Below, piece after piece: positions 8,836-49,453 of a DNA stretch of 64,000 nucleotides. The first letter of the stretch is position 1. Each line of letters starts with the position of its first letter. The position numbers were made by a program, and so were the translations under genes. The stretch covers positions 1 to 64,000 of IMG/VR virus record IMGVR_UViG_3300023278_002893. The stretch is one strand, 5' to 3'. The notes under the pieces were generated by a model that saw only the letters and a list, made by a program, of their open reading frames with translations, did not search any database and was not told the DNA's origin.

Positions 8836-9117
8836 ATGTACCAACGACAACCCGACGATAGAATCCACGTGAAGAATCTCGGATCCTTTACTCCAGATGG
8901 AAAAGGTAAGAGGTTCGTCATCAATTTGAAGCAGGGTGTTCCGAGGAACGCTTGCATCGAAAAGGATCGCGATGGGGTTCTTCGATGCTGGGCAAGCCAC
9001 TCCTGGTTAGACGAAGAAGCGGCCGCCTACGTAAGGGAGAACGCCACATTCAATCCAGAGGGCAACTCCTTCTGCTGGAACGAAGGTGTTCGAGTACAAG
9101 AAACCAGAAAGGGCTAA
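8836..9117 (+). CDS. hypothetical protein
   Basis: AAGGAG RBS. Confidence 0.6.
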   Translation: MYQRQPDDRIHVKNLGSFTPDGKGKRFVINLKQGVPRNACIEKDRDGVLRCWASHSWLDEEAAAYVRENATFNPEGNSFCWNEGVRVQETRKG

Positions 9118-13789: not shown

Positions 13790-13861
13790 GTTTCGGTAGC
13801 CAAGTTGGTAAGGCTGTTGCCTGCAAAGCAATGAGCGTGAGTTCGAGTCTCACCCGGACCT
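13790..13861 (+). tRNA. trnC: tRNA-Cys(GCA)
   Basis: GTTTCGG/CCGGACC (one mismatch), loop CT-GCA-AA, U73, followed by CAA. Confidence 0.85.
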
Positions 13862-18403: not shown

Positions 18404-19264
18404 ATGAGTAACATAAGGATCCTAAAGCAGGTGAGGGATGGTGGTATCATCCTTCAAGAACAATTCAAAGGGATGTTCTTCTCCGGAGGAGAACCCCACG
18501 TGGTAATCGAAGCTCCCGACAAGTTGGCGGGGGCTTCTGTCATTTTGGATGCTCGGGTAGGTTCCCCGGCAGATATGATGATGCTTCTCGCGGTAACCAA
18601 TGCCGTGAAGGAGTGTGATGCTAAAGAGATTTCTCTTCTTCTGCCCTACTTCCCGGGAGCGCGGCAAGACAGATCCGAATCTGGATTTGCTGTCACCTCC
18701 AAAATGTTCGCAGCAATTATCAATCTCCAAGGATACAAGGTTGTGGGGGTAGTAGATCCCCATTCTGTTGCAGCGATCGAAGACCTGGAACGATGTGTTC
18801 CGTTGTCTCCGATCCCACTGATCAAACAGTTCCTCCCCGAGGGGCTGGTTGGTTTGATTTGCCCCGACGAGGGGGCCATTCCGAGGACTGAGGCGCTTGC
18901 CAAAGAACTCGGAGGTGTGCATGTGGTGTATGCCCATAAGAAACGAGATCCAAGGACGGGTAAGCTTACCGGTTTCACCTTGGATCCTCTCCCCGAAGAA
19001 GGTAACTGGCTTCTCGCAGATGATATCTGTGATGCAGGCGGAACCTTCATGGGAACGGCAGGTCAGTACCTGGAAGATCCCAAAGGTACCGGGCCTCTCC
19101 ATCTATGGACAACGCACGGCATCTATTCCAGAGGACTGGAAGAACTCGCCGGTTATTTCGCAACGATAGGGTGCTCTGATTCTTTCCCGAGCGCCGTCAA
19201 TCCCCACCCACAACTCCAGGTGGTTTCCATTCTGGACAACCTTGATCTCCTAGGAGGTATCTAA
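18404..19264 (+). CDS. prs: PRPP-synthetase-like protein (probable Adps of NARP1)
   Basis: FSGGEPHV, LPYFPGARQDR, VDPHS, ICPDEGA, KKRD, LADDICDAGGTF. Confidence 0.92.
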   Translation: MSNIRILKQVRDGGIILQEQFKGMFFSGGEPHVVIEAPDKLAGASVILDARVGSPADMMMLLAVTNAVKECDAKEISLLLPYFPGARQDRSESGFAVTSKMFAAIINLQGYKVVGVVDPHSVAAIEDLERCVPLSPIPLIKQFLPEGLVGLICPDEGAIPRTEALAKELGGVHVVYAHKKRDPRTGKLTGFTLDPLPEEGNWLLADDICDAGGTFMGTAGQYLEDPKGTGPLHLWTTHGIYSRGLEELAGYFATIGCSDSFPSAVNPHPQLQVVSILDNLDLLGGI

Positions 19265-19266
19265 TC

Positions 19267-29700: not shown

Positions 29701-29898
29701 CACGTGGAAGAAGGAAAAGCAACCATCGTTAGTGCTATTGTGCGGCGCTTCCACAAGACCTACTTTGCAACCCGATCCAATCTCCACCCGCTTGATCTTT
29801 TGGAGCACCTGGAGCAAGAACCACGAGATCTCGTATCCTACCTGGTACAACAAACACTGGAGGGAGGAGATCGCGATAAGGAACTTAAGGTCGTATAG
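26734..29898 (+). CDS. single-chain beta-beta' fusion two-barrel DNA-directed RNA polymerase
   Basis: Beta-like motifs FGNYVIGDRVDRA, TFEDQILVS, KITNQHGNKG, IDVIV...RKNFGQILEA; beta'-like motifs PSAALRQP, ERFPCL, NLDFDGD; TTG start with AGGAG RBS. Confidence 0.9.
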   Translation: MKNFATILKAITQDQLHRFNNRMRASGNTLNLNVEIREESLNICVDFRTQDEVGTLIIPQLRKNEFGNYVIGDRVDRAMCPFMVVMDGNPQHISYEKMILAMLSMNMEDLFPEQGKRNQIGKILWAFYQKRGRLTLGQCQKFLNQRLFNALPLSGTSMQDWAMNHRVMIFDPIFDTLNPPEKLAYQRRKNELLHPWSSIGISEGAAATRNYILQKDLRNITAFGNRHHNPIRNLYSTLGMKGPEAPLVISEAAARLEDQGIVRGGWNWMTVFLDLPETFEDQILVSGRHAGKTVTYERTFTVFGEESVNVGDNILKGRVIGTNEDESSIYFDIDCERAEVIECKNGNVPFDGQDQPVRIVVLRVVYTFKEGFKITNQHGNKGIVKVLPDLGTVQDPVRGEVPIDVIVSAKSVQKRKNFGQILEALATRVTGPKKRMAVPDDLRIEVAQIEKKLVSAGYQKEGTCKVITPWGEFDSICGWVHWGVTKTPEEQLWQGRDVKATNQRGLRIRGNKVSPIELKAMTTLFGPRSQVVKEVLSHRQGQDEVRELLDIVRGMSGLYRDNLPTIDPATFVYKPSGMGTFHDQEALVGTVADEEMFPVGCYIQLPFRLLVSIPDDRSKGIQEGIAGENAYERLGTGTRYFEFDRLMVPSAALRQPWRHATGKLGLADIATQLNQILEGIDRLALGEIKEAQLSTLIFRYLHHIGRSLSTKNGKISTYAMSTRYPWSSKATAILGCGLETNWVEIHKDMARDLKVETGDYVMVERFPCLGFMSTRIQRVKVTDDPEAKYVIRVSGNSLGSMNLDFDGDVIYLMSFHTEGAKAELEHNFHNPHPKVKEVIDRLNNKKQPMTRTMTLQEMEIMSFDPMSPEEHAELNATSLAVKLWTGPTIALCYSMMRIVEGNIPYEDREAHINIEVFLDKVGNSVFSQKHGTKSLREECVEAVCLAKPEALVELGFPVRESAQLCNIIRSYASKLGVRTDEELLAHYKRHVEEGKATIVSAIVRRFHKTYFATRSNLHPLDLLEHLEQEPRDLVSYLVQQTLEGGDRDKELKVV

Positions 29899-33584: not shown

Positions 33585-34697
33585 ATGAACTTTGATATCA
33601 ATCCCCACCCCAAGCTGATCAACGACCACCAGACGATCCGACTCCCTAGAAAGTTGAGAAAAGAAATAGGAGTGTTGGTGGGTCAGTTCATGCAGATCAG
33701 CGGTAAGGAAACCTTAGTCTTGGAAATCGGGAAGGACCTCGATGATTTCGAGACCAGTGCTTATGTCAGTGAGTCTAACTTTAGGAAGATTGAGGGACAA
33801 CAGTTAGAGTTCAAGATACTTGACGTAACATTAGGCTGTGATCCGGAGTTTTTCATTATGTGGGGGAAGCGTCTGATATCTGCGACTACTTATCTCCCAT
33901 TCAATGGTGCAATCGGTGCTGATGGTAATTTAGGAGAGCTTAGGCCTATGTATGCCCGTCACGAAAATGACGTGGTAGCTAACCTCCAAACGCTAATCAC
34001 CCAAGTACCAACTCGTATGAAAAGAGGCTACGGTGTGTCCGAAGGGTATCCCAAAGACGGTTCCCTCTTCGACCTTCAAGCCCACTCCTATTACTATGGA
34101 CTCGCAGCTGGGTTCCATGTGCATATGGGAATACCTCCCGAAATTCTAAACACCCGTAAATCTTTCAACCGGATAGCAATGAACCATCTGGTGAAATGCT
34201 TCGATTGGTTCGTATCTGTACCTTTAGTTCCTCTCGACGAAACTCCAGGCAGAAGACTGGGAGAGACTACCTACGGACAAGCGGGAGATTACCGCACAAC
34301 CAATTCGACCCTAGAATATAGAACTCCGGGAGGATTCTATCTCAGAACACCCACACTAGCTCGGGGTATGATGGGGTTATGTCTCATGGTAGCGGAGAAT
34401 GTAGTTAGTAGGATGAAGATCGCCAGTAGGAACTTCACAAGTCTGGACAAACTAACTCCTAATGACATGCAAGAGATCATGCCTGTTCCAAAAGTAAGTA
34501 AGGTTAAAGGAACCCTGGGAGCGCGAAGCCCGCTCGCAGCGGAGGGTTGCCTGGATGAAATACAGGAAAGCTTGAAGAAATTCCCCAACTACGATAAACA
34601 TCGGCGTTCAGTAGATGATTTTTTCAGCGTAGTGAGGTCAGGTCAAATACCAGTTTCCGACTTAATCCCTAATTGGAAGGTTAATGATGCCCAATAG
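33585..34697 (+). CDS. COOH-NH2 ligase type 2 (phiEco32-like) with an extra N-terminal domain
   Basis: LGCDPEF, GADG..ELRP, GFHVHMG, RR....YGQAGDYR, LEYRTPG. Confidence 0.85.
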   Translation: MNFDINPHPKLINDHQTIRLPRKLRKEIGVLVGQFMQISGKETLVLEIGKDLDDFETSAYVSESNFRKIEGQQLEFKILDVTLGCDPEFFIMWGKRLISATTYLPFNGAIGADGNLGELRPMYARHENDVVANLQTLITQVPTRMKRGYGVSEGYPKDGSLFDLQAHSYYYGLAAGFHVHMGIPPEILNTRKSFNRIAMNHLVKCFDWFVSVPLVPLDETPGRRLGETTYGQAGDYRTTNSTLEYRTPGGFYLRTPTLARGMMGLCLMVAENVVSRMKIASRNFTSLDKLTPNDMQEIMPVPKVSKVKGTLGARSPLAAEGCLDEIQESLKKFPNYDKHRRSVDDFFSVVRSGQIPVSDLIPNWKVNDAQ

Positions 34698-37248: not shown

Positions 37249-38919
37249 ATGTGCGGAATAGTTGGTGTAATTCAGTATGAAAGTGCGGTAGATCGAGCCC
37301 TTCGCCAGAAGGTGCTGAAAATTCTTTTCTCCGAAACAATGATGCAGACTGAATCCCGAGGTAAAGACGCCACAGGTGTGTACCAAGTCCACAAAAACGG
37401 TGACTGGCTCATGACTAAAAAGGGAGTCAGAGTCACCGATTGGATACCTGCAATGCGGTCGGACTCCGGAAACGAAGATCCAATCGACTTCGAAGATATC
37501 GTGGGGAGCTGGCTCGAACATCCCAAAGATTTAGCCGCTGTCGTAGGACACTGCCGCGCGGCTACTGTGGGATCCAGAGGAAAAGACAACAACGACAATC
37601 ACCCCTTCGCGGTTCAGTTGGACGAGGATAACGCCATTTTAGGTATCCATAACGGTACCTTGACCAACCACGAGATCATCTTCGATCGCCTACCTGATCT
37701 TCTTCCTCGACATGGGAAGGTGGATAGCGAGTCTCTATTCCATTTCCTATACCATCTAACTAATGGGGGAACCGAACCGATCGACGGTGACATGTTGAAA
37801 TACATGGGAGAACGTGTAGAGGGCGCCTATGCGGTTATTACGATGAACACCCGATTTCCAGAACAGGTGGTAACGTTCCGTAAAGATCGGCCGATGGAAT
37901 TCTTCATGGTCGCGCCGCTTAATTGCCTCGTCATTACTTCTGAGAAAAAGTTCTTCGAAGCGGCATTGGAAAAGTACAACTTCATCCGCCAAATGCTGCC
38001 AGAGTATAAAGAACTTCCCGCCCTGAGAAGTTGCCACAGGGGACTCATGGACCGAGAGTTTCGAATCTTCGATACAAGTCTTCCTTGGCCCGAAGGACAT
38101 CACCCCACTCATGGAGATTTCGATAAGATCTCAGACGGAAAGGGGGATATGACAAAAATCAGCTCTCCCATTATAGACGACTGGAAGAGCCCGGGAAAAA
38201 CTTCCAAGATAACCCCATCCAACACGCGGAAAATAACGCCCGCGTCCAACACTTCCGTGAAAACTACTAAAGCGAATCCAGTAGTCACTTCCGCAACTAA
38301 CGCCCGGCAGGCCTCGGAGCAAGTGGACACGGTTATAGTAGAGGCGATAATTAAAGTGCCCATCGGTATGGATGACGCCGCTGCGAAGGGGATCGAGCAC
38401 GTAAAAGGACTGGGGCTCCTAGTTCAGTACGATACCATGAACGAACTGGCGAAGTCAATTGGTATAAAGGAAAAGGAACTTGAGCAGCTGAGCGGGCTGG
38501 AACTGGCCAACAAACTGGCATCCATTCACTTTAGCATCGGGCACGCAGCCGCACGACTGTCTGCTCAAAAAGAAGTTAGTGACATACGTTCCAAAGCAAG
38601 TGATAACACCAAACTTCTGGGAAGAGTTGCGGAAAAGCAAAGGAAGGCGGAAATCCATATCTGGGAACATCGCCAGCTGGTGACCATCCTTCTTGCGTTG
38701 GCGCAGGGTAATTTCAAGCTGGACGCCAGTAATGTAAAGATTTCGTTAGCCGCGTTTCCCCAACTGGCGGACGAAAAGAAACAATCCATCCTGAAATCAG
38801 CAAAGAATATATTGGAATGTCAGGAAACCAAACTACTTATCAAAAAGCTTCTGCAGCGCTTCAATGATGTCGCACAGGCTAATGCTAAGAAAATCCAGGA
38901 GTCTAAGGGGACTCCCTAG
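37249..38919 (+). CDS. class II glutamine amidotransferase with a long C-terminal helical extension
   Basis: MCG, RGKDATG, GHCRAAT.G....DNHPF, GIHNG, KVDSE. Confidence 0.92.
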   Translation: MCGIVGVIQYESAVDRALRQKVLKILFSETMMQTESRGKDATGVYQVHKNGDWLMTKKGVRVTDWIPAMRSDSGNEDPIDFEDIVGSWLEHPKDLAAVVGHCRAATVGSRGKDNNDNHPFAVQLDEDNAILGIHNGTLTNHEIIFDRLPDLLPRHGKVDSESLFHFLYHLTNGGTEPIDGDMLKYMGERVEGAYAVITMNTRFPEQVVTFRKDRPMEFFMVAPLNCLVITSEKKFFEAALEKYNFIRQMLPEYKELPALRSCHRGLMDREFRIFDTSLPWPEGHHPTHGDFDKISDGKGDMTKISSPIIDDWKSPGKTSKITPSNTRKITPASNTSVKTTKANPVVTSATNARQASEQVDTVIVEAIIKVPIGMDDAAAKGIEHVKGLGLLVQYDTMNELAKSIGIKEKELEQLSGLELANKLASIHFSIGHAAARLSAQKEVSDIRSKASDNTKLLGRVAEKQRKAEIHIWEHRQLVTILLALAQGNFKLDASNVKISLAAFPQLADEKKQSILKSAKNILECQETKLLIKKLLQRFNDVAQANAKKIQESKGTP

Positions 38920-38937: not shown

Positions 38938-40206
38938 ATGTCCAATAAAGTGCAGCTTCGACTCATGTCCTCCTCGAAGATGTCAAATGCGGGAGAAGGG
39001 GACATTATCAGATTCCCCAAGGCGGCGAGGCAGAATTTTGGCTTCTCCAACAGCAGGGTAATGATAGGTAAAGGCCCCTACGAGATAGCTCTCAAAGTAA
39101 AGAAAGCCTACTCGGAAGATGTACGCCGGCTCGCTGTCATGATCAAAAATGTGAAGATCTCCGAAGTGGATGCCCAGTGTGTAGGGTTCGTGCACAGCAA
39201 CGTACGGAAGAGAATCGTCGCGAAGCGGGGCGGTCAAGAGGATATCTGGATTACTGAGGGGATCGGCGACATTACCGTCGGCGCAGATCCCGAGTTTGGA
39301 TTGATTGACAGCGGTGGAATGTTGGTGCGCGGTAACAATATCGTATCAAAGGTAGGTAAATTCGGAAGTGATGGTCCGAGCGTAGAAGTTCGGCCCACTC
39401 CCAGTACTAACCACCTGGAAGTGGTGGGAAGCATCTCGGACATCATGGAAAATCCGCCTGGGCGAGCCGATGATTACAAATGGACGGGGGGTGCTACTTT
39501 CAGAGACACCGATAGGGTCTATTGGTTCGGCGGACATGTTCATCTCGGGAGACCCACTCAAATTGATGCGAATGAGGCGTATCCTATCTACAAAAGAATC
39601 GCAACCGCACTTGATGGGTTATTAGCCCTGCCAATGGTGCGCTTCGATACCCCCAATCCCTGGGAACGACGAAACGGATGCAAATACGATTACGGTAAAG
39701 CCGGGGACATACGGGCAGACTATCCAGAACAAAATCGATTCGAGTACCGGGTACTTAGCGGACTGTGGGTAGTACATCCCACATTAGCTACTATAGCAAT
39801 CGGTGCCGCCAAGTGTATTGTGGAAACCGCATACGGAAGGATTGCGGAAAAAGGATTTGATCCAATATGGGCGTCACAACCTATCTCTCGGGGAGGTATG
39901 TTGAAAAGCTTTGGACTGAAGGGAGTTCGGGAGATTCAAGCGGTAGTAAATCATGCGGATCCAAGGAGAATCACCCAAGACCATTTAGACACTTGGGAAA
40001 GAAACATTCGTAATTTGGACCGGTTCAATAAGTACAGGGCGGAGATCGAGGCGATGGTTGAACTGTCAAAGGAAAACCCAGAAAACATCGTCAGCGGGAT
40101 GGACCTAAACGTTAAAAGAAATTGGCAAGAGAGACGCACGTTGCTCCCTCGGGCCAGCAAGAAACTCAGAAAGGCGCTTGACGTCGTCGAGGAGAAAAGA
40201 AAATGA
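38938..40206 (+). CDS. COOH-NH2 ligase type 2 with an extra N-terminal domain
   Basis: VGADPEF, GSDG..VEVRP, GGHVHLG, RR....YGKAGDIR, FEYRVLS. Confidence 0.87.
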   Translation: MSNKVQLRLMSSSKMSNAGEGDIIRFPKAARQNFGFSNSRVMIGKGPYEIALKVKKAYSEDVRRLAVMIKNVKISEVDAQCVGFVHSNVRKRIVAKRGGQEDIWITEGIGDITVGADPEFGLIDSGGMLVRGNNIVSKVGKFGSDGPSVEVRPTPSTNHLEVVGSISDIMENPPGRADDYKWTGGATFRDTDRVYWFGGHVHLGRPTQIDANEAYPIYKRIATALDGLLALPMVRFDTPNPWERRNGCKYDYGKAGDIRADYPEQNRFEYRVLSGLWVVHPTLATIAIGAAKCIVETAYGRIAEKGFDPIWASQPISRGGMLKSFGLKGVREIQAVVNHADPRRITQDHLDTWERNIRNLDRFNKYRAEIEAMVELSKENPENIVSGMDLNVKRNWQERRTLLPRASKKLRKALDVVEEKRK

Positions 40207-41327
40207 ACAAGGGCTACGTGTGGTACTCCACAGGATCCTCCGAAACCGGAGAGAAGTTAGCAGCAGCGTTGGGATTCGACCACGGAAAGAAGACTCCCAA
40301 CCTACCCAAGTTCCCCATACTTTTTGGGTGGGGCTGCAAAGCAGAATCCCGTGAAAAGTACGATCCCGCCAAGGTCGATGCTGCGATCGAGAACGGAAGC
40401 CTTCGAGTCCTCAACCATCCCAAGGCGCTCTCCAGCGCCCGGAACAAGTTGGGACTTCTCACACGTCTCCGGGAAGCTGGACACCACGTTCCCGGCTTCG
40501 TGAGTATCAAGGGGGTCTCAGCAATGAAGCTAGTCGCGGAGATGAAATCCGCCGTTGACGATGGTGTCATTACATTTCCATGTGTGGGCTTCAACGAAAC
40601 CCACCGAGGGAAACCGATGTTCTGCTGGACAATGGAAGATCTGAATCAAATTTTGACGGCCAACAAGAACAGAGCACGCAGTGCTATCAAGATCGACTAC
40701 GTCCGAAGCCTCGTCCAAGGTACCGAGTATCGAATTCACGTGTTCCGTGACGAAGGACTCTGCGCGGAAGTAAAGGTTCTGGCCAACGATCCAACCGCTG
40801 CAACGGCAGCAAGTCTACTCACCAAACTCAAGAAGCGCCAGGAAAAGACGGAAGTGCCGCTAAACGCCACCCAGGACGAACTTCAATTCGTGGTAAGCCA
40901 GTTGGCGTCGGACCTCGTCCGAGGACCCAGCCACATGCTGCGAAGTGTCCAACACGGTTGGGAGATGAAGCCTATTGCCGTTGGGGAAGTTCCAGCAGAG
41001 GTAGTCGTAGCAGCAATCAACGCTCTCGATACCGCAGGACTCGATGTGGGCGCAGTCAGTGTCGAGTTTATTGAGGGGAGTGCTGTGATCAGCAATGTGG
41101 TCTCCGCCCCCGGCCTCAGTGAGGAACAAGTCGGTCTGTATGTAGCAGCCATCAAATCGTTCTCCAAGGCAGGTGGATCCAAGAAAGTAAAGCCCGGAGC
41201 AAATAAGGCAGTCAATGCGGGGGAGGGAAAAGCAACGCGCGAGATCATCGGCAAAATTACCCGCAAAGTGCGGCTAGGAGATGTTTCTCAGAAGCAGGCG
41301 GAGGCTATTCTGGAAAGCTTGGGGTAA
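40203..41327 (+). CDS. ATP-grasp (YheC/D-like) protein with degenerate catalytic motifs
   Basis: WGC, VLNHP..L..A.NK, EYRIHVF; GAVS and SNVVSAP where active enzymes have GAVD and EVN. Confidence 0.7.
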   Translation: MNKGYVWYSTGSSETGEKLAAALGFDHGKKTPNLPKFPILFGWGCKAESREKYDPAKVDAAIENGSLRVLNHPKALSSARNKLGLLTRLREAGHHVPGFVSIKGVSAMKLVAEMKSAVDDGVITFPCVGFNETHRGKPMFCWTMEDLNQILTANKNRARSAIKIDYVRSLVQGTEYRIHVFRDEGLCAEVKVLANDPTAATAASLLTKLKKRQEKTEVPLNATQDELQFVVSQLASDLVRGPSHMLRSVQHGWEMKPIAVGEVPAEVVVAAINALDTAGLDVGAVSVEFIEGSAVISNVVSAPGLSEEQVGLYVAAIKSFSKAGGSKKVKPGANKAVNAGEGKATREIIGKITRKVRLGDVSQKQAEAILESLG

Positions 41328-41332
41328 AGAAC

Positions 41333-41803
41333 ATGCTCTATTTTCCCATATCGCACCTTGAAATCGCCGGGCAGATCGCGGAGCTAATCAATAACTTAAG
41401 CGACCTGTCTAAGCAAAGAACAGCTGACGATATCCTTAAAGGAAAAACCCACTATGTCGTGGAGACTCACGGTAAGTTCGTGATCGGGGCGGTGGGTATC
41501 CACAAGGTCAGCTATGAACTTTCGGAACTAAAGCACCTAGTGGTTCATCCCGATTGGAGAGGCAGAAGTTTGGGCCACTTCATAAGTAAGAGAGCATTGT
41601 CAGTGTGTGGTACCCCGTCAATCTATGCCACTGTAAGAACCTCGAATCTTGCCAGCCTCAAATCTCTAACCAGATCGGGATTCGTAAAATCCCACGAAAG
41701 AATCGCAGGCGAGCATAGACTTGCTGTACTGATAAGGGCGGCTCCTAAATGCCAAGTTATAACATCTGCGTCGAGGCAGACCTTGTCCTCAGAACAAGGT
41801 TAG
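41333..41803 (+). CDS. GNAT family acetyltransferase
   Basis: ELKHLVVHPDWRGRSLG; N..S...L...GF. Confidence 0.88.
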   Translation: MLYFPISHLEIAGQIAELINNLSDLSKQRTADDILKGKTHYVVETHGKFVIGAVGIHKVSYELSELKHLVVHPDWRGRSLGHFISKRALSVCGTPSIYATVRTSNLASLKSLTRSGFVKSHERIAGEHRLAVLIRAAPKCQVITSASRQTLSSEQG

Positions 41804-43044: not shown

Positions 43045-44076
43045 ATGATTACGCTCGACACTTTTATCGGGAACACCGAACTAATTCAGCTCCTGAAAAT
43101 AGAAGTAATGGCAGCAAGAATGCGCAACAAAGAAATGCCCCACGTTTTACTAAAAGGCCCGGCTGGGTGCGGAAAGACTACCCTCGGAGAGGTACTCGCA
43201 CGCGAATTTGGAGGGGAGCTGACAACGCTCACCCCCAATACCGCAAAGAACGCGGACGACTTAAGAAAGTTCTTCCTGGAGATGCCGGATCAGGGGTACG
43301 ATGAGGAAGGCAAAATAGTTGGTAAAATAGATCCTCAAATCGTATTCATCGACGAGGTTCACCAACTGTCTCTGCTAGCCCAGGAGCTGTTGGGAATCGC
43401 AATGCATGACTGGAGACTTCCTGTCAGGGTAGGGGGCAAGGATGAGTTCGAATGGGTACCTAGATTTACATTAGTGGGTGCAACTACCGTACCTGGAAAA
43501 CTATCTAAACCCTTCCGAGACAGATTCAAGGTACAAGCCCTGTTCGAAACCTATTCCCACAGAGAATCTCTAGAGATAGTAGATGTTCACGCCAGGAATG
43601 AAGGTCTCCAGCTGGGTGAGGGTGTCTCAGATTCGATAGCAAAGAGATCCAGAGGAGTGGGACGTCTCTTGGTAAGGTATTTAGACAGACTTGCATCAGC
43701 GGCAGTGGTGGCATCTCAGGTCAGACCGGAGGGAAGTAATGTTATTACTTTACCTCTTGCAAATAAAATGTTTGCAGATTTCCTAAAAGTGGACGATCGG
43801 GGGCTGACGAAAACGGACATAAAGATCTTAAAGCAGCTCCACCTTCTGGAAGATCCAGTAGGATTAGATACCCTAGCTGCGATAACCAACGAAGAAAAAT
43901 CTACCATAGAACAAGAAATTGAACCATATTTAGTGCAGGAGGGGCTACTAGCCCGAACTAAACGTGGTCGAGTTATAACAGACGAAGGCAGACGATATTT
44001 ACACACCGCCGGCTACATCAAACTGGCGCCTACCTCGGCGAGAGGGGGCCGCATTATGGGAGCATCGGAGAAATGA
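43045..44076 (+). CDS. ruvB: Holliday junction branch-migration AAA+ ATPase RuvB
   Basis: HVLLKGPAGCGKTTL, FIDEVH, FTLVGATT, PFRDRF, EPYLVQEG...RTKRGR. Confidence 0.92.
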   Translation: MITLDTFIGNTELIQLLKIEVMAARMRNKEMPHVLLKGPAGCGKTTLGEVLAREFGGELTTLTPNTAKNADDLRKFFLEMPDQGYDEEGKIVGKIDPQIVFIDEVHQLSLLAQELLGIAMHDWRLPVRVGGKDEFEWVPRFTLVGATTVPGKLSKPFRDRFKVQALFETYSHRESLEIVDVHARNEGLQLGEGVSDSIAKRSRGVGRLLVRYLDRLASAAVVASQVRPEGSNVITLPLANKMFADFLKVDDRGLTKTDIKILKQLHLLEDPVGLDTLAAITNEEKSTIEQEIEPYLVQEGLLARTKRGRVITDEGRRYLHTAGYIKLAPTSARGGRIMGASEK

Positions 44077-44909
44077 GTCGAGGAAGCGTAGAGTATCTGA
44101 AGAAAAAACTTAAGGGTCCCATCCTAGAAGAAATCATCGACCCCGCGGACTACTCGCGCGACGACATCATGAAGTCATACTTCCGAGAAATCTTATTCCT
44201 AGCGTCTCGTTTTACTCGCCCCTACGTAGATTACGAAGACCTGGTAGATGAGGGAATCATAGGATTGCTTGACGCGATCAAAAGATTCGACATCAAAAAG
44301 GCCAATAACAATCCCAAGGCATTCCACAACCTCGCTATCGTCCGTATAAAGAGCCATATGTTCGAATTCTTCCTAGCGAACAATACTCAATATACGATTC
44401 CGAACTACATGGCACGGGCAATGGAATTGCTCGGACAAATTCGAGCCACTATCAGCAACTCCAACTACCGAGGGAACAAACAGGAAGCTCTTCGACACCT
44501 CGTATGTGAAGACTTCGAGAACACCGCGGCTCCCGAGGCTGTCAAGAAACTAGGGGTAGTGAAAGGCAAGATGCAACGACTTGCTATCAGCTCCGCTAAG
44601 AGCTATGAAGATATGGTACTTACAGTATTGAAGGTCGAAAGGGACATCGAAAGCTACGAAACGCCCGGCAGTGAGGTAGAACCCACACCAGAAGAAATCA
44701 CTGCGGACAGGGAATATATAGAGAAATTCCTGGACAACCTAAATCCCGACGCAAAGGCTGTCATCACCATGGTCTTAGAGGGCAAGTCCCTGAAGGAAGC
44801 TGGTAGAGAGCGTGGATTCTCTCGTGAACGGGCGCGGCAAATCAAAGAGGCTACGATGAAATACTTCAGGGCCACGCCTATGTACAAAGAATCCGTAGAA
44901 AAAGAATAA
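44073..44909 (+). CDS. sigma-70 family RNA polymerase sigma factor
   Basis: Region 2: EDLVDEGIIGLLDAIKRFD; region 4: SLKEAGRERGFSRERARQI. Confidence 0.88.
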   Translation: MSRGSVEYLKKKLKGPILEEIIDPADYSRDDIMKSYFREILFLASRFTRPYVDYEDLVDEGIIGLLDAIKRFDIKKANNNPKAFHNLAIVRIKSHMFEFFLANNTQYTIPNYMARAMELLGQIRATISNSNYRGNKQEALRHLVCEDFENTAAPEAVKKLGVVKGKMQRLAISSAKSYEDMVLTVLKVERDIESYETPGSEVEPTPEEITADREYIEKFLDNLNPDAKAVITMVLEGKSLKEAGRERGFSRERARQIKEATMKYFRATPMYKESVEKE

Positions 44910-44944: not shown

Positions 44945-46426
44945 ATGAAGCGACTAAGAGCACTGCGGGAGCTTCGAAAAGAGTTAGGGGCAGAAGTTTT
45001 CTTGGTTGGAGGAACGGTCAGAGACCTGATCCGACGAAGAGAACCCAACGACCTGGACGTTATGGTACGAGGAATCGCCCCCGCTGAATTCGAAACTTTC
45101 CTACGTAAAAGGGGTGCCCTAGAACTTGTAGGTGCATCCTTCGGAGTATATCTTTTCAGACCCACCGAAGAGGGAGGGCAGATCGAGATCGCATTCCCCA
45201 GAACTGAAATTAGCACGGGCGACAAGCACGGTGAGAGTGGTTGGAATGCCGTTCCGGACACCGATCTATCCGTGGAAGAAGATTCAAAAAGACGAGATTT
45301 CACTATCAATGCGATGTATCTCAGCATTGATGATGTGACAGAGAGCGGAGAGTTTAAGCGCGAGCGCGTGATTGATTTTCATAACGGGTTGGATCACATA
45401 AAGAAACGCCTTATCGTAGCAGTGGGAGATCCCGAAGAGAGGATTGAAGAAGATCCACTACGTATGATGAGGGCAATGGTTCTAATAGCCCGAACCGGTT
45501 ATCGTTTGGAGGGCAACACCTTCGGCGCGATCAAAAGAAACGTTGGAAAGGTACAATCAGTGTCCGCTGAACGTATCCGAGATGAGTTCATAAAGATCAT
45601 GGAGGCGGAGAAACCTTCTCGCGGATTCAAAGCCATGTCCAGAACTGAACTTCTAGGAATAATCTTTCCAGAACTACACGCATGTACAGGCTGCGGTCAA
45701 AACCCCAAGTACCACTCGTACCCAGTCTTCGAACACAGCATCACAGCGGCAGACGCAGCTTGCTCCCTGACTGACAGGTTAGATGTTAGGTTCGCAGCAC
45801 TTTGCCACGATTTGGGAAAGGTTCCTACGCGGGAAGTGCGCCCGGGAGGTGATGGCCCAAACGACGTCTCGTTCCATAACCACGAGATGGCATCCTGTAA
45901 GCTGACTTACGCTTTCATGTGCCGATTGAAGTTCCCAAAGAAGTTCACCGACGCGGTGATTGCGTTAGTACGAATGCATCAATATAAATACGATCGAGAG
46001 TGGACCGATAAGGCTGTGCGAAGGTTCATTCGGAACATCGGACTCACCCGGGCAGACCTGGACGATCTCGAAAACCACCCCCAGTTCCTACTCAGGATGG
46101 CGGATCGAATGGGAAACCAACTGAAAGTACACCTCCCCGTAACCATCAAACAGAGAGACTTTCAGGGGCGACTTCGAGAAGTGTATGAAAGCTCAGGAGC
46201 CCACAGCCTTCGGGACTTGAAGATCAATGGTCGAGATCTCATAGAACGATTCGTGATCGCTACGGGTCCTGTAGTGGGTAAGGTAATTGCCCACCTGTTT
46301 GACGCGGTGGAGGAAGCTCCGGAACTAAACAACAGGGACGACCTTTTCCGTCTTGCCGGATTGTTCCTAGAGGAGGAAGAAAATGGAAGTGATCAAACTA
46401 ACCGAGTCAGCTCAAGTACAAGCTAA
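44945..46426 (+). CDS. cca: CCA tRNA nucleotidyltransferase with HD domain
   Basis: LVGGTVRD...DLD, RRDFTINA, EDPLRMMRA, ERIRDEF, HS...LCHDLGK. Confidence 0.93.
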   Translation: MKRLRALRELRKELGAEVFLVGGTVRDLIRRREPNDLDVMVRGIAPAEFETFLRKRGALELVGASFGVYLFRPTEEGGQIEIAFPRTEISTGDKHGESGWNAVPDTDLSVEEDSKRRDFTINAMYLSIDDVTESGEFKRERVIDFHNGLDHIKKRLIVAVGDPEERIEEDPLRMMRAMVLIARTGYRLEGNTFGAIKRNVGKVQSVSAERIRDEFIKIMEAEKPSRGFKAMSRTELLGIIFPELHACTGCGQNPKYHSYPVFEHSITAADAACSLTDRLDVRFAALCHDLGKVPTREVRPGGDGPNDVSFHNHEMASCKLTYAFMCRLKFPKKFTDAVIALVRMHQYKYDREWTDKAVRRFIRNIGLTRADLDDLENHPQFLLRMADRMGNQLKVHLPVTIKQRDFQGRLREVYESSGAHSLRDLKINGRDLIERFVIATGPVVGKVIAHLFDAVEEAPELNNRDDLFRLAGLFLEEEENGSDQTNRVSSSTS

Positions 46427-46718
46427 GGAACTGCTGGCAAGAGAATCAGAAGCACCTGCGGGTCTGAGAGTGGAGGCAGTAGCGGGGAGCTGTAATAACT
46501 TGCAGTATAGAATAGGATGGGACAATCCCAAGGAAGGGGATGAGGTTTTTACTTATCCAAATGGAATGGTTGTCATGGTAGACCAGAAATCCTCTGCGAT
46601 GCTGAAGGGCAGCGTCCTAGAATTTCACAACACAAGCGAAGGATCTGGCTTCGAGGTCATCAATCCTCGTTCCACAGGATGTTCCGGTTGTGAGTGCGGT
46701 AATGGTTCTAATGTCTAA
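46383..46718 (+). CDS. iscA: HesB/IscA family Fe-S cluster assembly carrier
   Basis: LRV...GSCN..QY, VDQKS...LKGS.LEF, NP.....CECG. Confidence 0.85.
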   Translation: MEVIKLTESAQVQAKELLARESEAPAGLRVEAVAGSCNNLQYRIGWDNPKEGDEVFTYPNGMVVMVDQKSSAMLKGSVLEFHNTSEGSGFEVINPRSTGCSGCECGNGSNV

Positions 46719-46777
46719 ACGGTGTTAAGTAGCACGTAAGTGGCGGGGCACTGACCTAAACCCGCGCCGTTTAGTAG

Positions 46778-46812
46778 AAAAGCCCACACTAATAGCACAG
46801 TGTGGGCTTTTT
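46778..46812 (+). terminator. intrinsic terminator after iscA
   Basis: 13-bp stem AAAAGCCCACACT/AGTGTGGGCTTTT, 8-nt loop, U-tract. Confidence 0.85.
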
Positions 46813-48600
46813 GCGTTCGGCTCCCGTCCTGACGGAGGCGAACGTCGGGGTCAAATTCGATCCTGGTTGTCACATAGGAGATCCTCTCTCTGTGAGTAAA
46901 ATAGGGCTGAGTTTAGATACCAAAAGATGGGAAAGGCAGCAGGCAAGTAGCCACATAACCTGCCCTACTGGTGCTTTTGGAATTCATCTATTCTCTTGCT
47001 CCGACTTTTGATGTCAAGATTCCTCGACAACCTTACTCCCCAGGCCCAATATCCAAAGTAGGGGCGCCAACGCCTCGAAAGCGGTGCGGGCCTCCCCGAC
47101 CTGTCTCGCAGTAGTTACCCTGAAGGGAAGCTGGATGGGAAGAACGCTGCGAACTCAGAACCCGGGCTCAATCGTATTTGACCTTAAGTCGGAAGACATC
47201 GTTGGATCACGGTTCGGAGATCTTTTCTGAACTATCTAACGGCTCCTGTCTTTCTATAGTACTGTGGGGTAGTTTATACCTGGATTAAAACGGTACGTGT
47301 GTTGACCTTGGATCTTGGGAAAAAGTGAAAGTTTTCCCCCGGGGTTCAGATAAGAGTTCATGTGGCCAGATCACATTTCCTCCCCGAATCTGAATTCATT
47401 ATCCAATACTTCATCACTTCTTACAGACATACAAGAACGAACCCGGTGTTCCTCGGCCAGAAACATTTCGCCAAGGTGACCTACGGCCGTTCTCTATGCA
47501 TTAAGCCCTGATGTATGGGGCTGAAGCGCGCGTGTCTGTAAGAAGCGTATTTAGCAACGTTCGAATCGTTGCCCCCACTCCAGTATCTTTTGCGGAGGAG
47601 TGTTACCTCTTCCGTTTTAGCACCTACACTAACTCCAGTAGGTGCCCGTTAATCTAAATAACAATTCCAGACAGCGTGCTACCCTATATTAGAGTGGGTA
47701 CGTTCAATCGGATCTGTTTATAAGATTACGGTGAGCCACTGAGAACTACTAATTCCCAGTAGGAGTGTAATTCTATTGATGTACTAGTTAAAGTAAAAAA
47801 CCTGGTTGACGGGGGAATCGGTCTGAAGGAAAGTCTTGGAAACACTTGCGGAACTATTGAACTGAAGCCGGATTAGTGAGTATAGCAACCACCAACCCAA
47901 AGCGAATGCTTGACTTGCGTTCAAGAGGGTGTGGTGTGGGAGCTGAAAGCGGAGGTGGATGTGACCTAGCAACAAAAGTACGGAAGAGACTGGAATGATG
48001 ACGGATTTCTGGTTTTCTACTTCTGCGAAGAATGGCTAATGTGCGACCTTGTGGGGATCAATGTAACCCAGTCTTGAACTGGGAAGCTTCCTGCCGGGAC
48101 TTCAGAACCATACTTCTTTCCTACCACGCAAATTTGGTTCGCCAACATCACTGCCTGGCGGGGAAGAGGGTACTCTCGGGTCGGGGGAGTAGTGTCCTCC
48201 GACAATATTTTTTTTACGAGATAGAACTGGTTTAGTCCGTATACTACCCTCGGATGTGCCATAGTTAGGGAAGGTAATCTCCCATCATAGCGAAGAAGCT
48301 TAGACTGATGGGACTGAACTAACTGTGAAGCTGCCTTGTTTATGGAAAAGACGGACCTCCGTGTTAAGTGAAAACCAATTAACTCTGTCAACTTAAGAGA
48401 CAGAAAAGAGCGGTGGAAACTTAAGGCGGGTGGAGTATCTTAGCGTTGGGGTTTTCGATAAAGGCTTTGTGGCCCATACCCTTGGAAGCAATTAGTCAAA
48501 GTAAGTGCGGAAGGTAAGAGATTAGATCTCTCGGCAATCAACAAGGACCTACCCCAGAGTAGGGGATACTTGGAAATGTTCCTTAGAAACGGAGTTCAAC
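46813..48600 (+). ncRNA. about 1.8-kb structured non-coding region (one or several RNAs, family unknown)
   Basis: No credible ORF in an otherwise gene-dense genome; many helices whose G.U pairs are valid only on the + strand. Confidence 0.55.
47264..47582 (+). ncRNA. tRNA-like cloverleaf with a 248-nt insert in place of the anticodon loop
   Basis: Acceptor GTGGGG/CCCCAC + T + CCA; D-stem GTTT/AAAC; stem GTACG/CGTAT; T-arm GCAACG-TTCGAAT-CGTTGC. Confidence 0.65.
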
Positions 48601-48601
48601 A

Positions 48602-49453
48602 ATGATATATGTATTATATAAGGGCTCAGGCTGTCATTCCGGACGTTCACTTCGGAAACAACTTGCAGAACTACACGACGGTCAAGTAGCGGGGGGTTAC
48701 CCCGGACGACTGAAGAAACTGGTGGCGAGGTCGGGAGAACCCGAGTTCGTAGTCAATTTAGGAACCACAGACGAGTTTACTTTAAGTTCTACTTTTTTGA
48801 ACAATAGGGATATGGTCAAAGCTGCGTCTAATAAGAAAGCCGCACGGAAGATATTTGAAGAACAGGGCGTAGCTGCCCCCAAACTTTACCTCAAGGCCGC
48901 CGACATTCCAGAATCAGGATTCCCGGTGGTAGGAAGGACAAGCTACCACTCCAAGGGTAATGGATTTTGGTATTGCAAGAACATGCGGGACGTAAACCAG
49001 GCTGTCAGGAACGGGGCAACCCACTTCATGCAATTCATTCCAAGGACTCGGGAGTATCGTGTTCATACATTCGTCAAAGCGAAGCACATGGGGAAAGAGG
49101 GTCGCGAGGTTGCTGACTTCGTGTCGGTAAAGATCTCCGAAAAGGTATGGACAGGAGAGGGTAAGCCAAACCCCAATGAGCCGCAGAAAAATCACAACTT
49201 TGGTTGGACTTTTCTCGGCCCCCAAAACCGGCGGGAAGAAGAACTAAACGTGGTAAGAAGAGCAGCCAAGGAGTCTATCGCAGCATTGAAAATGGATTTC
49301 GGTGCCGTGGATGTGATGTACCACGTTAGGAGTAAGAGTCCCCACGTATTAGAAGTGAACTCCACTCCCAGCCTGGCAGACGATAACTCAGACACATGTA
49401 GGCGTTATGCCGACCGGATCCTCAGGACTTTGGGGAAACTAAAGGAAAACTAG
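48602..49453 (+). CDS. ATP-grasp ligase (phiEco32/YheC-D-like)
   Basis: AASNKK..R..F, PVVGR..YH..G, EYRVH, DFGAVD, VLEVNSTPSL. Confidence 0.9.
   Translation: MIYVLYKGSGCHSGRSLRKQLAELHDGQVAGGYPGRLKKLVARSGEPEFVVNLGTTDEFTLSSTFLNNRDMVKAASNKKAARKIFEEQGVAAPKLYLKAADIPESGFPVVGRTSYHSKGNGFWYCKNMRDVNQAVRNGATHFMQFIPRTREYRVHTFVKAKHMGKEGREVADFVSVKISEKVWTGEGKPNPNEPQKNHNFGWTFLGPQNRREEELNVVRRAAKESIAALKMDFGAVDVMYHVRSKSPHVLEVNSTPSLADDNSDTCRRYADRILRTLGKLKEN

What the first reader, a model, noticed from the sequence alone, without database searches (positions are those of the whole stretch)
47264..47582. tRNA-shaped RNA whose anticodon loop is replaced by a 248-nt folded domain
Seen (traced by hand): acceptor G47264-G47269 pairs perfectly with C47573-C47578, followed by discriminator T47579 and CCA at 47580-47582. 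Then TA; D-stem GTTT/AAAC around ATACCTGGATTA; G26; a 5-bp 'anticodon' stem GTACG(47293-47297)/CGTAT(47546-47550); and a T-arm GCAACG-TTCGAAT-CGTTGC. This is a 6/6 acceptor/T stack. The insert (47298-47545) holds a 14-bp helix (47417-47430/47532-47545) enclosing further stems, plus GGGAAAA/TTTTCCC (47317-47338). A 9-bp hairpin with U-tract (47592-47618) follows the CCA. Known: tmRNA has a similar overall layout and length but needs G3.U70/A73 alanine identity and a tag ORF; neither is seen here (G3-C70, U73). No group I or II splice geometry fits. Inference: possibly a new class of tRNA-mimic RNA, such as an aminoacylatable scaffold, a decoy for anticodon nucleases or synthetases, or a non-alanine ribosome-rescue RNA. 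It lies about 0.8 kb downstream of the phage CCA-adding enzyme gene.
Basis: partly seen in the sequence, partly recalled or inferred. Interest (0 to 1): 0.82.

Follow-up and report, generated by a model that had tools for sequence, protein, structure and literature searches.

The report
New tRNA-like RNA in jumbo phages
A clade of about 300-kb marine-sediment phages carries a conserved RNA gene that folds like a tRNA, except that two large folded arms replace the anticodon loop; it matches no described RNA family and sits inside a 2-kb gene-free island of other conserved structured RNAs.

Summary
It is also far beyond chance: the same composite pattern gave 0 hits in 1.1 Mb (both strands) of unrelated viral DNA.

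I found the element in 26 related phage contigs, always downstream of the CCA-adding enzyme gene. This includes a distant relative whose enzyme is only 36% identical. All four tRNA-type helices covary.

The 175-346-nt insert always folds into two arms that form a three-way junction with the 'anticodon' stem. Arm 1 carries a conserved motif, GAGUUCC-CACAC-AGGAGG...CCUCC. Arm 2 ends in a hairpin flanked by AGUA/GAA.

It is not an ordinary tmRNA. No member has G3:U70, there is no conserved tag frame, and ARAGORN and Rfam find nothing. It is not an intron-bearing tRNA either, because no anticodon loop can be restored and there is no group I core.

The 3' tail is N+CCA or a one-base variant, the same pattern as the phage's own tRNA genes. 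The discriminator and the first acceptor pair vary, which argues against a fixed amino-acid identity.

The RNA lies between two other conserved, ORF-free structured segments.

Best reading (about 0.42): a new tRNA-like RNA family whose tRNA domain recruits RNase P, 3' processing and CCA addition, while the arms carry the unknown function. No transcript data were available.

The parts
44945..46426 (+). CCA-adding enzyme gene (493 aa; nucleotidyltransferase head plus HD domain). It lies upstream of the RNA in every relative.
   Evidence: Pfam PF01743/PF12627/PF01966/PF13735. The gap to the RNA is 541-1200 nt in 24 loci, and the linkage also holds in L003.
46780..46815 (+). Terminator-like hairpin after the IscA-like gene (46383-46718). 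It marks the left edge of the ORF-free island.
   Evidence: Sequence. The same hairpin plus U run aligns in the relatives. Weak match to the Rfam Thr_leader terminator part.
46816..47263 (+). Upstream conserved non-coding module (about 450 nt) that ends exactly at the 5' end of the tRNA-like domain.
   Evidence: Conserved blocks across all subgroups. Substitutions show no 3-base periodicity. All three stop codons occur in the frames. No Rfam match.
47264..47269 (+). Acceptor stem, 5' strand (GUGGGG).
   Evidence: Pairs with 47573-47578. Pairs 2-6 are kept in 21-24 of 24 distinct members, with double changes.
47270..47292 (+). U8 A9, D stem GUUU/AAAC, 12-nt D loop with G18 G19-like GG, and G26.
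   Evidence: Nearly invariant in sequence across the clade. The D stem covaries in L184 (GUCU/AGAC) and L003 (GUAU/AUAC).
47293..47297 (+). 5' strand of the 'anticodon-stem' equivalent (H2a), which pairs with 47546-47550.
   Evidence: 112 of 120 cells paired, against a maximum of 88 in 500 shuffles; 16 extra pair types.
47299..47409 (+). Arm 1. Closing helix GUGUUG/CAAUAC (47299-304/47404-409). Contains the GGGAAAA/UUUUCCC hairpin and a diverged copy of the family motif (GAGUUC at 47354-59, CCUCCCC at 47379-85).
   Evidence: Arm 1 is a top-level arm in the independent minimum-energy folds of all 25 members. Its closing helix shows compensatory changes. Motif table.
47417..47545 (+). Arm 2. Closed by the 14-bp helix 47417-30/47532-45. 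Contains an inner branch (about 47433-47493) and an apical hairpin.
   Evidence: Equivalent closing helices with different sequences occur in all members.
47496..47529 (+). Apical hairpin of arm 2, flanked by AUUA (family consensus AGUA) on the 5' side and GAA on the 3' side. This resembles a loop-E / S-turn internal loop.
   Evidence: Present as [A/U]GUA[A/G]-hairpin-GAA in most members. The identification as an S-turn is inference from the consensus.
47546..47553 (+). 3' strand of H2a (CGUAU) plus a 3-nt variable region (UUA; family consensus NAA).
47554..47572 (+). T arm: 6-bp stem with loop UUCGAAU.
   Evidence: The loop is invariant (UUCRAAU). The stem covaries: 115 of 120 cells paired, against a shuffle maximum of 102. 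Some members have a bulge on the 5' strand.
47573..47582 (+). Acceptor stem 3' strand (CCCCAC), discriminator U, and encoded CCA.
   Evidence: Across the family the tail is N + CCA/UCA/CUA/CAA/UUA/AUU, as in the phage's own tRNA genes.
47592..47618 (+). Terminator-like hairpin plus U tract. Found only in the window and its nearest relatives.
   Evidence: Present in L151 and L200. In the other subgroups a conserved AUCUUCUCCG-type segment follows the tail instead.
47619..48601 (+). Downstream conserved non-coding module. Its most conserved, covarying blocks are at 48270-48320 and 48446-48491.
   Evidence: An ORF-free gap of 711-1129 nt occurs in the 14 relatives with enough sequence downstream. 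About 73% identity to subgroup A without codon periodicity. Covarying blocks. No Rfam match.

Best explanation
This is a previously undescribed family of phage RNAs. A genuine tRNA-like domain (acceptor/T stack, D arm, T loop, single-stranded N-CCA-type tail) is fused through its 'anticodon' stem to a three-way junction that carries two conserved arms.

Proposed mechanism:
1. The + strand of a roughly 2-kb ORF-free island is transcribed.
2. The tRNA-like domain folds into an L-shape.
3. That shape is read by the tRNA maturation machinery. RNase P cuts at G47264 and frees the upstream module. The 3' trailer is removed. The tail is completed or repaired to CCA, most simply by the CCA-adding enzyme encoded 0.84 kb upstream.
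4. The product is a stable RNA of 240-420 nt with tRNA-type ends. Its two arms (the GAGUUCC-CACAC-AGGAGG/CCUCC motif and the AGUA/GAA hairpin) are the working part and bind an unknown partner, plausibly in the translation or tRNA-handling apparatus.

What is shown: the fold, its conservation and covariation, the linkage to the CCA-enzyme gene, and the tRNA-gene-like behaviour of the 3' tail.
What is inferred: transcription, the cleavage sites, CCA addition, and any function of the arms.
For: - 26 members lie downstream of the CCA-enzyme gene.
- All four tRNA helices covary: acceptor 130/144 cells paired, D stem 96/96, H2a 112/120, T stem 115/120. Each value exceeds all 500 shuffles.
- RNAalifold on one subgroup predicts 79 pairs, 29 of them with compensatory changes, including both arm-closing helices.
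- The tRNA core positions are kept: U8, A14, GG in the D loop, A21, and T loop UUCRAAU.
- When the insert is replaced by a 7-nt loop, ARAGORN calls a tRNA in 13 of 25 members.
- The tail is CCA or a one-base variant. The phage's 14 tRNA genes behave the same way: 10 have CCA and 4 have CAA.
- G.U pairs fix the strand as +.
- The two-arm topology appears in all 25 independent folds.
- The flanks are conserved, ORF-free and non-periodic, and they abut the tRNA-like domain directly.
- Control scans found 0 hits in 1.1 Mb of unrelated viral DNA.
- A pattern scan of genomes from 185,579 species found 19 sites; only one, a mis-binned phage contig, carries the RNA.
Against: - There is no transcript evidence. 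No RNA run was listed for the window or for a homologue, so expression, ends and processing are all unverified.
- The acceptor/T stack is 11-12 bp rather than 7+5. The first pair is mismatched in 11 of 24 distinct members, and several T stems carry a bulge. RNase P or CCA-enzyme recognition could therefore be weaker than for real tRNAs.
- Linkage to the CCA-enzyme gene may be plain synteny within one phage lineage.
- Nothing in the data identifies a partner for the arms.
Confidence: 0.42

Rival explanations
1. The tRNA-like domain is not cut out. The whole ORF-free island of 1.8-2 kb is one giant 'ornate' RNA, or an obligate assembly, with an embedded tRNA-like module. This would be comparable to GOLLD RNAs, which sometimes carry tRNAs in their linker region.
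For: - Most relatives have no terminator after the tRNA-like domain; a conserved sequence follows the tail directly.
- The upstream module ends at the acceptor 5' end.
- Both flanks are conserved and structured.
- GOLLD and ROOL are phage RNAs found near tRNA islands, and some GOLLD RNAs have tRNAs in their linker (bioRxiv 10.1101/2024.12.08.627333).
Against: - No Rfam match to GOLLD, ROOL or any other large RNA in the window or in 9 relatives.
- The window and subgroup A do have a terminator-like hairpin right after the CCA.
- A complete acceptor/T/D set with an N-CCA-like tail is just what RNase P and 3' processing enzymes recognise (established knowledge), so leaving it uncut would be unusual.
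Confidence: 0.2
2. It is a tRNA decoy or sponge. The tRNA-like domain would titrate a tRNA-directed host factor, for example an acceptor-end or CCA-targeting defence nuclease or toxin, a stress sensor of uncharged tRNA, or a tRNA-modifying enzyme. The arms would add stability or a second binding site.
For: - The D arm and T loop are almost invariant in sequence, not only in structure, which suggests recognition by a specific protein.
- The phage invests in tRNA supply and repair: 14 tRNA genes and a CCA-adding enzyme with an HD domain.
Against: - With no anticodon loop, it cannot decoy anticodon nucleases.
- A decoy would not need two large arms kept by covariation.
- No defence or counter-defence gene is linked to it among the neighbours examined.
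Confidence: 0.13
3. It is an aminoacylated, tmRNA-like RNA that is charged with an amino acid other than alanine, enters the ribosome and rescues or hijacks it.
For: - The overall layout matches tmRNA: a tRNA-like domain whose anticodon arm is replaced by a large domain, of similar length.
- The D-loop segment CUGGAUU..AAC resembles the tmRNA 5' region. This resemblance is from memory only.
- UAA or UAG is always present at the AGUA motif.
- Huge phages are known to encode tmRNA and SmpB (PMC7162821).
Against: - No G3:U70 in 25 of 25 members.
- The discriminator is U, A, G or C, and pair 1:72 is variable or mismatched, so no conserved identity set exists.
- Frames ending at the UAA/UAG share neither length nor C-terminus, and insertions break them. 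The stop triplet follows automatically from AGUA plus a purine.
- ARAGORN finds no tmRNA in 56 loci.
- The Rfam tmRNA models stay silent even at E<=10.
- T-stem bulges are unfavourable for EF-Tu binding (inference).
- No SmpB gene among the neighbours examined.
Confidence: 0.1
4. It is an ordinary tRNA gene interrupted by an intron (group I or other) in the anticodon loop.
For: - The insert is at the anticodon-loop position.
- In the window it is 248 nt, similar in size to known tRNA group I introns (memory).
Against: - No match to Rfam group I or group II intron models at E<=10 in the window or at E<=5 in 9 relatives.
- The nucleotides next to the stem (1-2 nt on the 5' side, 'AA' on the 3' side) cannot rebuild a 7-nt loop with U33 in any member.
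- The insert is two independent arms ranging from 175 to 346 nt, not a P3-P9 core.
- The acceptor/T geometry and T-stem bulges are atypical for a decoding tRNA.
Confidence: 0.02

Closest known systems
tmRNA (SsrA)
   Same: Both have a tRNA-like domain with acceptor stem, T arm and CCA-type end, whose anticodon arm is replaced by a large structured domain. Lengths are similar (about 250-400 nt). tmRNAs also occur in huge phages (PMC7162821).
   Different: - This RNA has a real D stem.
- It has no G3:U70 and no fixed discriminator.
- It has no conserved tag reading frame.
- The insert is a three-way junction with two arms, not helix 2 followed by a ring of pseudoknots.
- ARAGORN and the Rfam tmRNA models do not recognise it.
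Phage T4 stable RNAs C and D (species 1 and 2) from the T4 tRNA region
   Same: These are phage-encoded stable RNAs of unknown function that are associated with the phage tRNA genes (PMC9697503). By my memory of the older literature they are matured with the tRNAs.
   Different: No sequence or structure comparison was possible with these tools. The T4 RNAs are much shorter (about 120-140 nt, from memory). A full cloverleaf core with a two-arm insert has not been described for them.
GOLLD / ROOL large ornate phage RNAs
   Same: These are large structured RNAs of unknown function in phages, found near tRNA genes. GOLLD sometimes has tRNAs in its linker (bioRxiv 10.1101/2024.12.08.627333). Here a tRNA-like module lies between two conserved structured segments.
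   Different: No Rfam match to either family. The embedded element here is not a decoding tRNA. Whether the island forms one RNA or any assembly is unknown.
Other tRNA mimics: bacterial YrlA (Y RNA-like), MALAT1 mascRNA, plant-virus 3' tRNA-like structures
   Same: They use a tRNA-like fold to recruit tRNA-binding or tRNA-processing enzymes. mascRNA serves as an RNase P/Z processing signal that also forms the end of the upstream RNA (PMC8457004, title and abstract). YrlA mimics tRNA (PMC4201824).
   Different: In YrlA the tRNA-like module is internal and the two RNA ends form the Ro-binding stem (memory), which is the opposite topology. mascRNA and the viral structures carry no large insert at the anticodon position. 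None of them is found in dsDNA phages.

Membership tests
tmRNA | tRNA-like domain with acceptor stem, T arm and 3' CCA-type end | tested here: met
   Unlike tmRNA, this RNA also keeps a 4-bp D stem.
tmRNA | G3:U70 wobble pair (alanine identity), normally with A73 | tested here: not met
   Pair 3 is G-C (15) or U-A (9) in 24 distinct members, never G.U. The discriminator is U, A, G or C.
tmRNA | Short tag reading frame with a resume codon, a conserved stop and a conserved C-terminal degradation signal | tested here: not met
   Three-frame translations of arm 2 in 25 members show no shared frame, length or C-terminus. The constant UAA/UAG follows from the AGUA+purine motif.
tmRNA | Pseudoknot PK1 upstream of the frame, and helix 2 enclosing the whole insert | tested here: inconclusive
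   The insert is a three-way junction with two nested arms. Nested folding tools cannot exclude a pseudoknot.
tmRNA | Recognised by tmRNA detectors (ARAGORN; the tmRNA covariance models in Rfam) | tested here: not met
   ARAGORN found 0 tmRNAs in the window and 56 loci. cmscan found no tmRNA hit at E<=10 in the window or E<=5 in 9 relatives.
tmRNA | SmpB partner encoded or available | not testable with these tools
   Only 64 kb of the 298-kb genome is held. None of the 26 neighbouring ORFs scanned is SmpB. The host is unknown.
Intron-containing tRNA gene | The exons rebuild a 5-bp anticodon stem plus a 7-nt loop with U33 and a purine at position 37 | tested here: not met
   Only 1-2 nt on the 5' side and 'AA' on the 3' side lie between the stem and the arm helices. 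No member can give a canonical loop.
Intron-containing tRNA gene | Group I (or group II) catalytic core in the insert | tested here: not met
   No Rfam intron hit at permissive thresholds. The insert is two independent arms of very variable size.
Canonical tRNA | Cloverleaf with anticodon loop, detected by ARAGORN or Rfam RF00005 | tested here: not met
   Not called at the locus, although 14 tRNAs were called elsewhere in the window. It is called only after artificial replacement of the insert, in 13 of 25 members.
Canonical tRNA | 7-bp acceptor stem plus 5-bp T stem, regular T stem | tested here: not met
   The stems are 5-6 plus 5-6 bp, 11-12 bp in total. Pair 1 is mismatched in 11 of 24 members, and several T stems have 5'-strand bulges.
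GOLLD / ROOL | Match to the family covariance model | tested here: not met
   cmscan at gathering threshold on the whole window, and at E<=5 on 46650-48650 and on 9 relatives' loci, gave no hit.
RNase P RNA (considered for the upstream module 46816-47263) | Match to the RNase P covariance models in Rfam, with a P4 core | tested here: not met
   By eye I saw resemblances to CR-I and CR-V (from memory). cmscan at E<=10 on 46810-47270 returned none of the RNase P models, and neither did the 9 relatives.
Ribosomal RNA (considered for the island) | Sequence similarity to 16S, 23S or 5S rRNA | tested here: not met
   blastn-short and nhmmer profiles of the flanks against an E. coli rrn operon (L203) gave only chance matches or tRNA T-arm matches.

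The most novel reading that the evidence does not exclude
The RNA is a new class of trans-acting tRNA mimic that receives CCA and is possibly charged. Its tRNA domain would dock it into a tRNA site, on the ribosome or on a tRNA-dependent enzyme, so that the two conserved arms act there. Together with the two flanking structured RNAs it would form a phage-encoded RNA machine or assembly with no described counterpart.
Probability: 0.2. Interest if true: 0.9.

Novelty: new variant of a known kind. Interest (0 to 1): 0.72.

Why it matters
tRNA-shaped RNAs that do something other than decode are rare (tmRNA, Y-like RNAs, viral 3' ends, mascRNA). Each has revealed a way in which tRNA-handling enzymes are reused.

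This one is a well-supported new family: 26 members, covariation in every helix, and no hit in Rfam or in genomes of 185,579 species. It keeps the full tRNA core but swaps the anticodon loop for a conserved two-arm domain.

It lies in a 2-kb protein-free island of other conserved structured RNAs, in uncultivated jumbo phages of about 300 kb, next to their CCA-adding enzyme gene.

It gives a concrete substrate for testing how phages use the host RNase P and CCA machinery to make non-tRNA products. It also adds candidates to the small set of large phage RNAs of unknown function.

Tried and rejected
- Ordinary tmRNA. Rejected: no G3:U70, no conserved frame, and the detectors stay silent.
- Group I/II or other intron in a tRNA. 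Rejected.
- Hidden protein-coding region under another genetic code. All three stop codons occur in the frames of the island, and long ORFs in the window end about equally in TAA, TAG and TGA, so no recoding is indicated. Substitutions lack codon periodicity.
- Upstream module as an RNase P RNA. I saw resemblances by eye, but no covariance-model support.
- Island as an rRNA-like sequence. No similarity to an E. coli rrn operon.
- Switch between the acceptor 5' strand and the arm-1 CCCAC motif, a loop-loop contact between the arm-2 loop and the AGGAGG of arm 1, and pairing of CACAC with the GUGU at the junction. None of these is kept across subgroups (inspection).
- Alternative hairpin UUCC/GGAG in arm 1. 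It is broken in subgroups B and E, whereas GGAGG/CCUCC covaries to GAAGG/CCUUC and AGGAC/GUCCU.
- Transcript evidence. No run was listed for the window. For a homologue only DNA runs from marine sediment and subsurface samples were listed.
- Complex prediction of the L002 RNA with its CCA enzyme. The job was not folded and gives no evidence either way.
- blastn of the RNA against INPHARED phages. No match.
- The 14-mer GTGGGGTAGTTTAT in IMG/VR. Almost all hits were chance.
- Host clue from genome contigs. 18 of 19 pattern hits were chance. The one real hit is a phage contig binned as an archaeal MAG.
Full report
OBSERVATION

- a 6-bp acceptor stem (47264-69/47573-78);
- U47579 followed by CCA (47580-82);
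- U8 A9, then a GUUU/AAAC D stem around a 12-nt loop that contains GG;
- G26;
- a 5-bp stem at 47293-97/47546-50;
- a 6-bp T stem with loop UUCGAAU (47554-72);
- a 248-nt insert that contains the 14-bp helix and the GGGAAAA/UUUUCCC hairpin;
- a terminator-like hairpin 10 nt after the CCA.

The CCA-adding enzyme gene (44945-46426) ends 838 nt upstream. The RNA folds better than all 100 dinucleotide shuffles, with z = -3.7.

NEGATIVE DATABASE RESULTS

ARAGORN finds 14 tRNAs in the window but nothing at this locus. Rfam 15 finds nothing at gathering thresholds. At E<=10 on the locus alone it finds no tRNA, tmRNA, intron, RNase P, GOLLD, ROOL, OLE or Y-RNA model. There is no blastn match in 50,697 GenBank phage records.

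ORIGIN OF THE WINDOW AND ITS RELATIVES

The window belongs to a 297.7-kb IMG/VR contig. A 295.8-kb relative (L002; CCA enzyme 70% identical) is syntenic with it. The CCA enzyme has about 100 homologues at 60-78% identity in public metagenomes. Runs that hold a homologue are marine-sediment and subsurface DNA samples.

I fetched 53 metagenome loci through the enzyme. I then found the RNA by eye in L002, by pattern and profile searches in the others, in a distant phage whose enzyme is only 36% identical (L003), and in one contig binned as an archaeal MAG (L217). In total 26 loci carry it, with 24 distinct tRNA-like domains among the 25 tabulated. It always sits 541-1200 nt downstream of the CCA-enzyme gene (where I could measure the gap). 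Members are 240-420 nt long.

BEYOND CHANCE

A composite scan required a T arm, a complementary acceptor strand 150-560 nt upstream, U8, a 4-bp D stem with GG in its loop, and a 5-bp stem bracketing the insert. It gave 0 hits in 1.1 Mb (both strands) of unrelated viral loci. In loci of the phage clade it gave 16 hits, plus one in L003.

A motif scan of genomes from 185,579 bacterial and archaeal species gave 19 sites. Only the mis-binned phage contig carries the rest of the structure.

THE tRNA-LIKE DOMAIN

Across 24 distinct members the helices are paired as follows; each observed value exceeds all 500 column shuffles:

| Helix | Cells paired | Shuffle maximum |
|---|---|---|
| Acceptor | 130/144 | 111 |
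| D stem | 96/96 | 95 |
| 'Anticodon' stem (H2a) | 112/120 | 88 |
| T stem | 115/120 | 102 |

There are many double changes. H2a examples are GUACG/CGUAU, CGUUG/CGACG, ACUGU/ACAGU, CACUG/CAGUG and CAUCG/CGAUG. T-stem examples are GCAACG/CGUUGC, GUAAGG/CCUUAC and AUGAGG/CCUCAU.

The D arm and T loop are almost invariant in sequence (UA-GUUU-AUAYCUGGNUUA-AAAC; UUCRAAU). They keep the tRNA core positions U8, A14, G18 G19 and A21. G.U pairs fix the strand as +.

When the insert is replaced in silico by a 7-nt loop, ARAGORN calls a tRNA in 13 of 25 members, including the window's.

The domain departs from a decoding tRNA in several ways:
- the acceptor/T stack is 5-6 plus 5-6 bp (11-12 in all);
- pair 1:72 is mismatched in 11 of 24 members;
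- several T stems have a bulged base;
- the variable region is only about 3 nt.

THE 3' TAIL

After the acceptor comes one variable base (U, A, G or C). Then comes CCA in about half of the members, and UCA, CUA, CAA, UUA or AUU in the rest.

The phage's own 14 tRNA genes behave the same way: 10 encode CCA and 4 have CAA. This is the pattern expected for genes whose products are finished by a CCA-adding enzyme, which every one of these phages encodes just upstream.

The variable discriminator and the variable top of the acceptor stem argue against a conserved aminoacylation identity.

THE INSERT

Independent minimum-energy folds of the insert in all 25 members give the same topology. There are two top-level arms separated by 0-2 nt (7 nt in the window), so H2a opens into a three-way junction. 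RNAalifold on one subgroup gives 79 pairs, 29 with compensatory changes, and these include both arm-closing helices (other subgroups).

Arm 1 carries a conserved segment, GAGUUCC-CACAC(A/C)-AGGAGG-loop-CCCUCC. Its hairpin covaries: GGAGG/CCUCC changes to GAAGG/CCUUC or AGGAC/GUCCU. The window's copy is diverged.

Arm 2 ends in a hairpin with a pyrimidine-rich loop, flanked by [A/U]GUA on the 5' side and GAA on the 3' side. This is the consensus of a loop-E / S-turn internal loop; that identification is inference.

WHAT IT IS NOT

Ordinary tmRNA is excluded:
- pair 3:70 is never G.U;
- there is no shared reading frame, length or C-terminus in any frame of arm 2, and insertions interrupt the candidates;
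- the constant UAA/UAG is explained by AGUA followed by a purine;
- ARAGORN finds no tmRNA in 56 loci, and Rfam finds none in ten members.

An intron-bearing tRNA is excluded because no canonical anticodon loop can be rebuilt and no intron core is detectable.

A hidden ORF is excluded by stop codons of all three kinds in the frames and by the lack of codon periodicity.

The RNA is the middle of an ORF-free island that runs from the terminator of an IscA-like gene (46780-46815) to an ATP-grasp (RimK-like) gene at 48602.

The upstream 450 nt (46816-47263) has blocks conserved in all subgroups and ends exactly at the acceptor 5' end.

The downstream 711-1129 nt is ORF-free in the 14 relatives I could check. 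It is 73% identical to the nearest subgroup without codon periodicity. It contains blocks with clear covariation, at window 48270-48320 and 48446-48491.

The terminator after the CCA exists only in the window and its nearest relatives. In the others a conserved AUCUUCUCCG-type segment follows the tail directly.

Neither flank matches Rfam or an E. coli rrn operon. I saw resemblances to RNase P and rRNA motifs by eye, but they failed these tests.

HOW IT MOST LIKELY WORKS

Shown:
- a conserved L-shape-competent tRNA-like domain with a tRNA-gene-like tail;
- a conserved two-arm domain;
- constant linkage to a CCA-adding enzyme gene;
- structured RNA modules directly abutting it.

Inferred from the known substrate rules of RNase P, tRNA 3' processing and CCA-adding enzymes (recognition of the acceptor/T stack and the elbow, not of the anticodon): the tRNA-like domain acts as a processing and end-protection handle. 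It releases the upstream module, defines a stable middle RNA with a CCA end, and presents the two arms to an unknown partner. I put this at about 0.42.

Rivals:
- the island is one giant uncut RNA with an embedded tRNA-like module, by analogy with GOLLD RNAs that carry tRNAs in their linker: 0.20;
- a decoy for tRNA-directed factors: 0.13;
- a charged, tmRNA-like ribosome-directed RNA: 0.10;
- an intron-bearing tRNA: 0.02.

No transcript data could be obtained, and the one complex-prediction job was not folded. Expression and RNA ends therefore remain untested.

COMPARISON AND NOVELTY

It works most like tmRNA in layout and most like mascRNA in the proposed processing role. It is a member of neither, nor of any Rfam family. 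Phage T4 RNAs C and D, which are still of unknown function, and GOLLD/ROOL are the nearest phage precedents. My literature searches found no description of such an RNA.

I rate it a new variant of a known kind (tRNA-mimic non-coding RNAs). There is a real chance that the island as a whole is something categorically new.

Noticed in passing
window 46816-47263: Conserved, ORF-free, non-periodic segment of about 450 nt between the IscA-like gene's terminator and the tRNA-like RNA. Blocks shared by all subgroups include ..AACAGG.., GGAAAGACAG, CCAAUAGUAG-hairpin-AAAUG, GAAGUAGUUACC..AAGGGA..GGGGAUGAACG and AGUAAAACCGUGGG. It is probably a separate structured RNA or the 5' module of the same precursor. 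No Rfam match.
   Followed up: partly
window 47619-48601 (most conserved blocks 48270-48320 and 48446-48491): A second ORF-free conserved segment, 711-1129 nt in the 14 relatives checked. It has covarying helices capped by invariant loops (UAGCG..GAAGCU and GAUAAAGG...GCCCAUAC). There is a terminator-like hairpin at 48180-48203. No Rfam match and no rRNA similarity.
   Followed up: partly
window 1116-1192: A tRNA gene with an 8-nt anticodon loop (CUUUCAAU). ARAGORN reports it as 'tRNA-???' with the 4-base anticodon UUCA. It could read UGA or a quadruplet. Stop-codon use in long ORFs shows no sign of recoding.
   Followed up: partly
window 5292-5364, 5850-5922, 8237-8321, 13790-13861: Four of the 14 phage tRNA genes (Ala, Phe, Ser-GGA, Cys) are followed by CAA instead of CCA, so they depend on 3' trimming and CCA addition. 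The other ten encode CCA.
   Followed up: yes
window 33585-34697, 37249-38919, 38938-40206, 40203-41327, 41333-41803, 48602-49453: A cluster of peptide/amide-ligase-type genes brackets the RNA island: two phiEco32-like COOH-NH2 ligases, a class-II glutamine amidotransferase, a GNAT acetyltransferase and two RimK-like ATP-grasp proteins. One of the ATP-grasp genes starts right after the island.
   Followed up: partly
window 26734-29898: A 1054-aa ORF with weak matches to both RNA polymerase beta (Rpb2 domain 6) and beta-prime (Rpb1 domain 2) domains. This suggests a fused multisubunit-type phage RNA polymerase. A sigma-70-like gene lies at 44073-44909.
   Followed up: no
window 18404-20754: Genes resembling ribose-phosphate pyrophosphokinase and nicotinate phosphoribosyltransferase (NAD salvage), next to the tRNA region.
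   Followed up: no
L217 (WJJK01000109.1, 26.5 kb; RNA on the minus strand, starting at position 298 of the reverse-complemented locus): A contig deposited as part of a 'Candidatus Altiarchaeales archaeon' MAG carries both the phage-type CCA-enzyme homologue (P0010, 70% identical) and a 248-nt member of this RNA family. It is most likely a phage contig that was mis-binned.
   Followed up: partly
L003 8287-8371: In the distant relative, right after its 375-nt tRNA-like RNA, there is an 85-nt stretch with an acceptor-like pairing and a T arm (GGUUCGACC) that ARAGORN does not call. ARAGORN does call a tRNA-Leu at 8830-8916.
   Followed up: no
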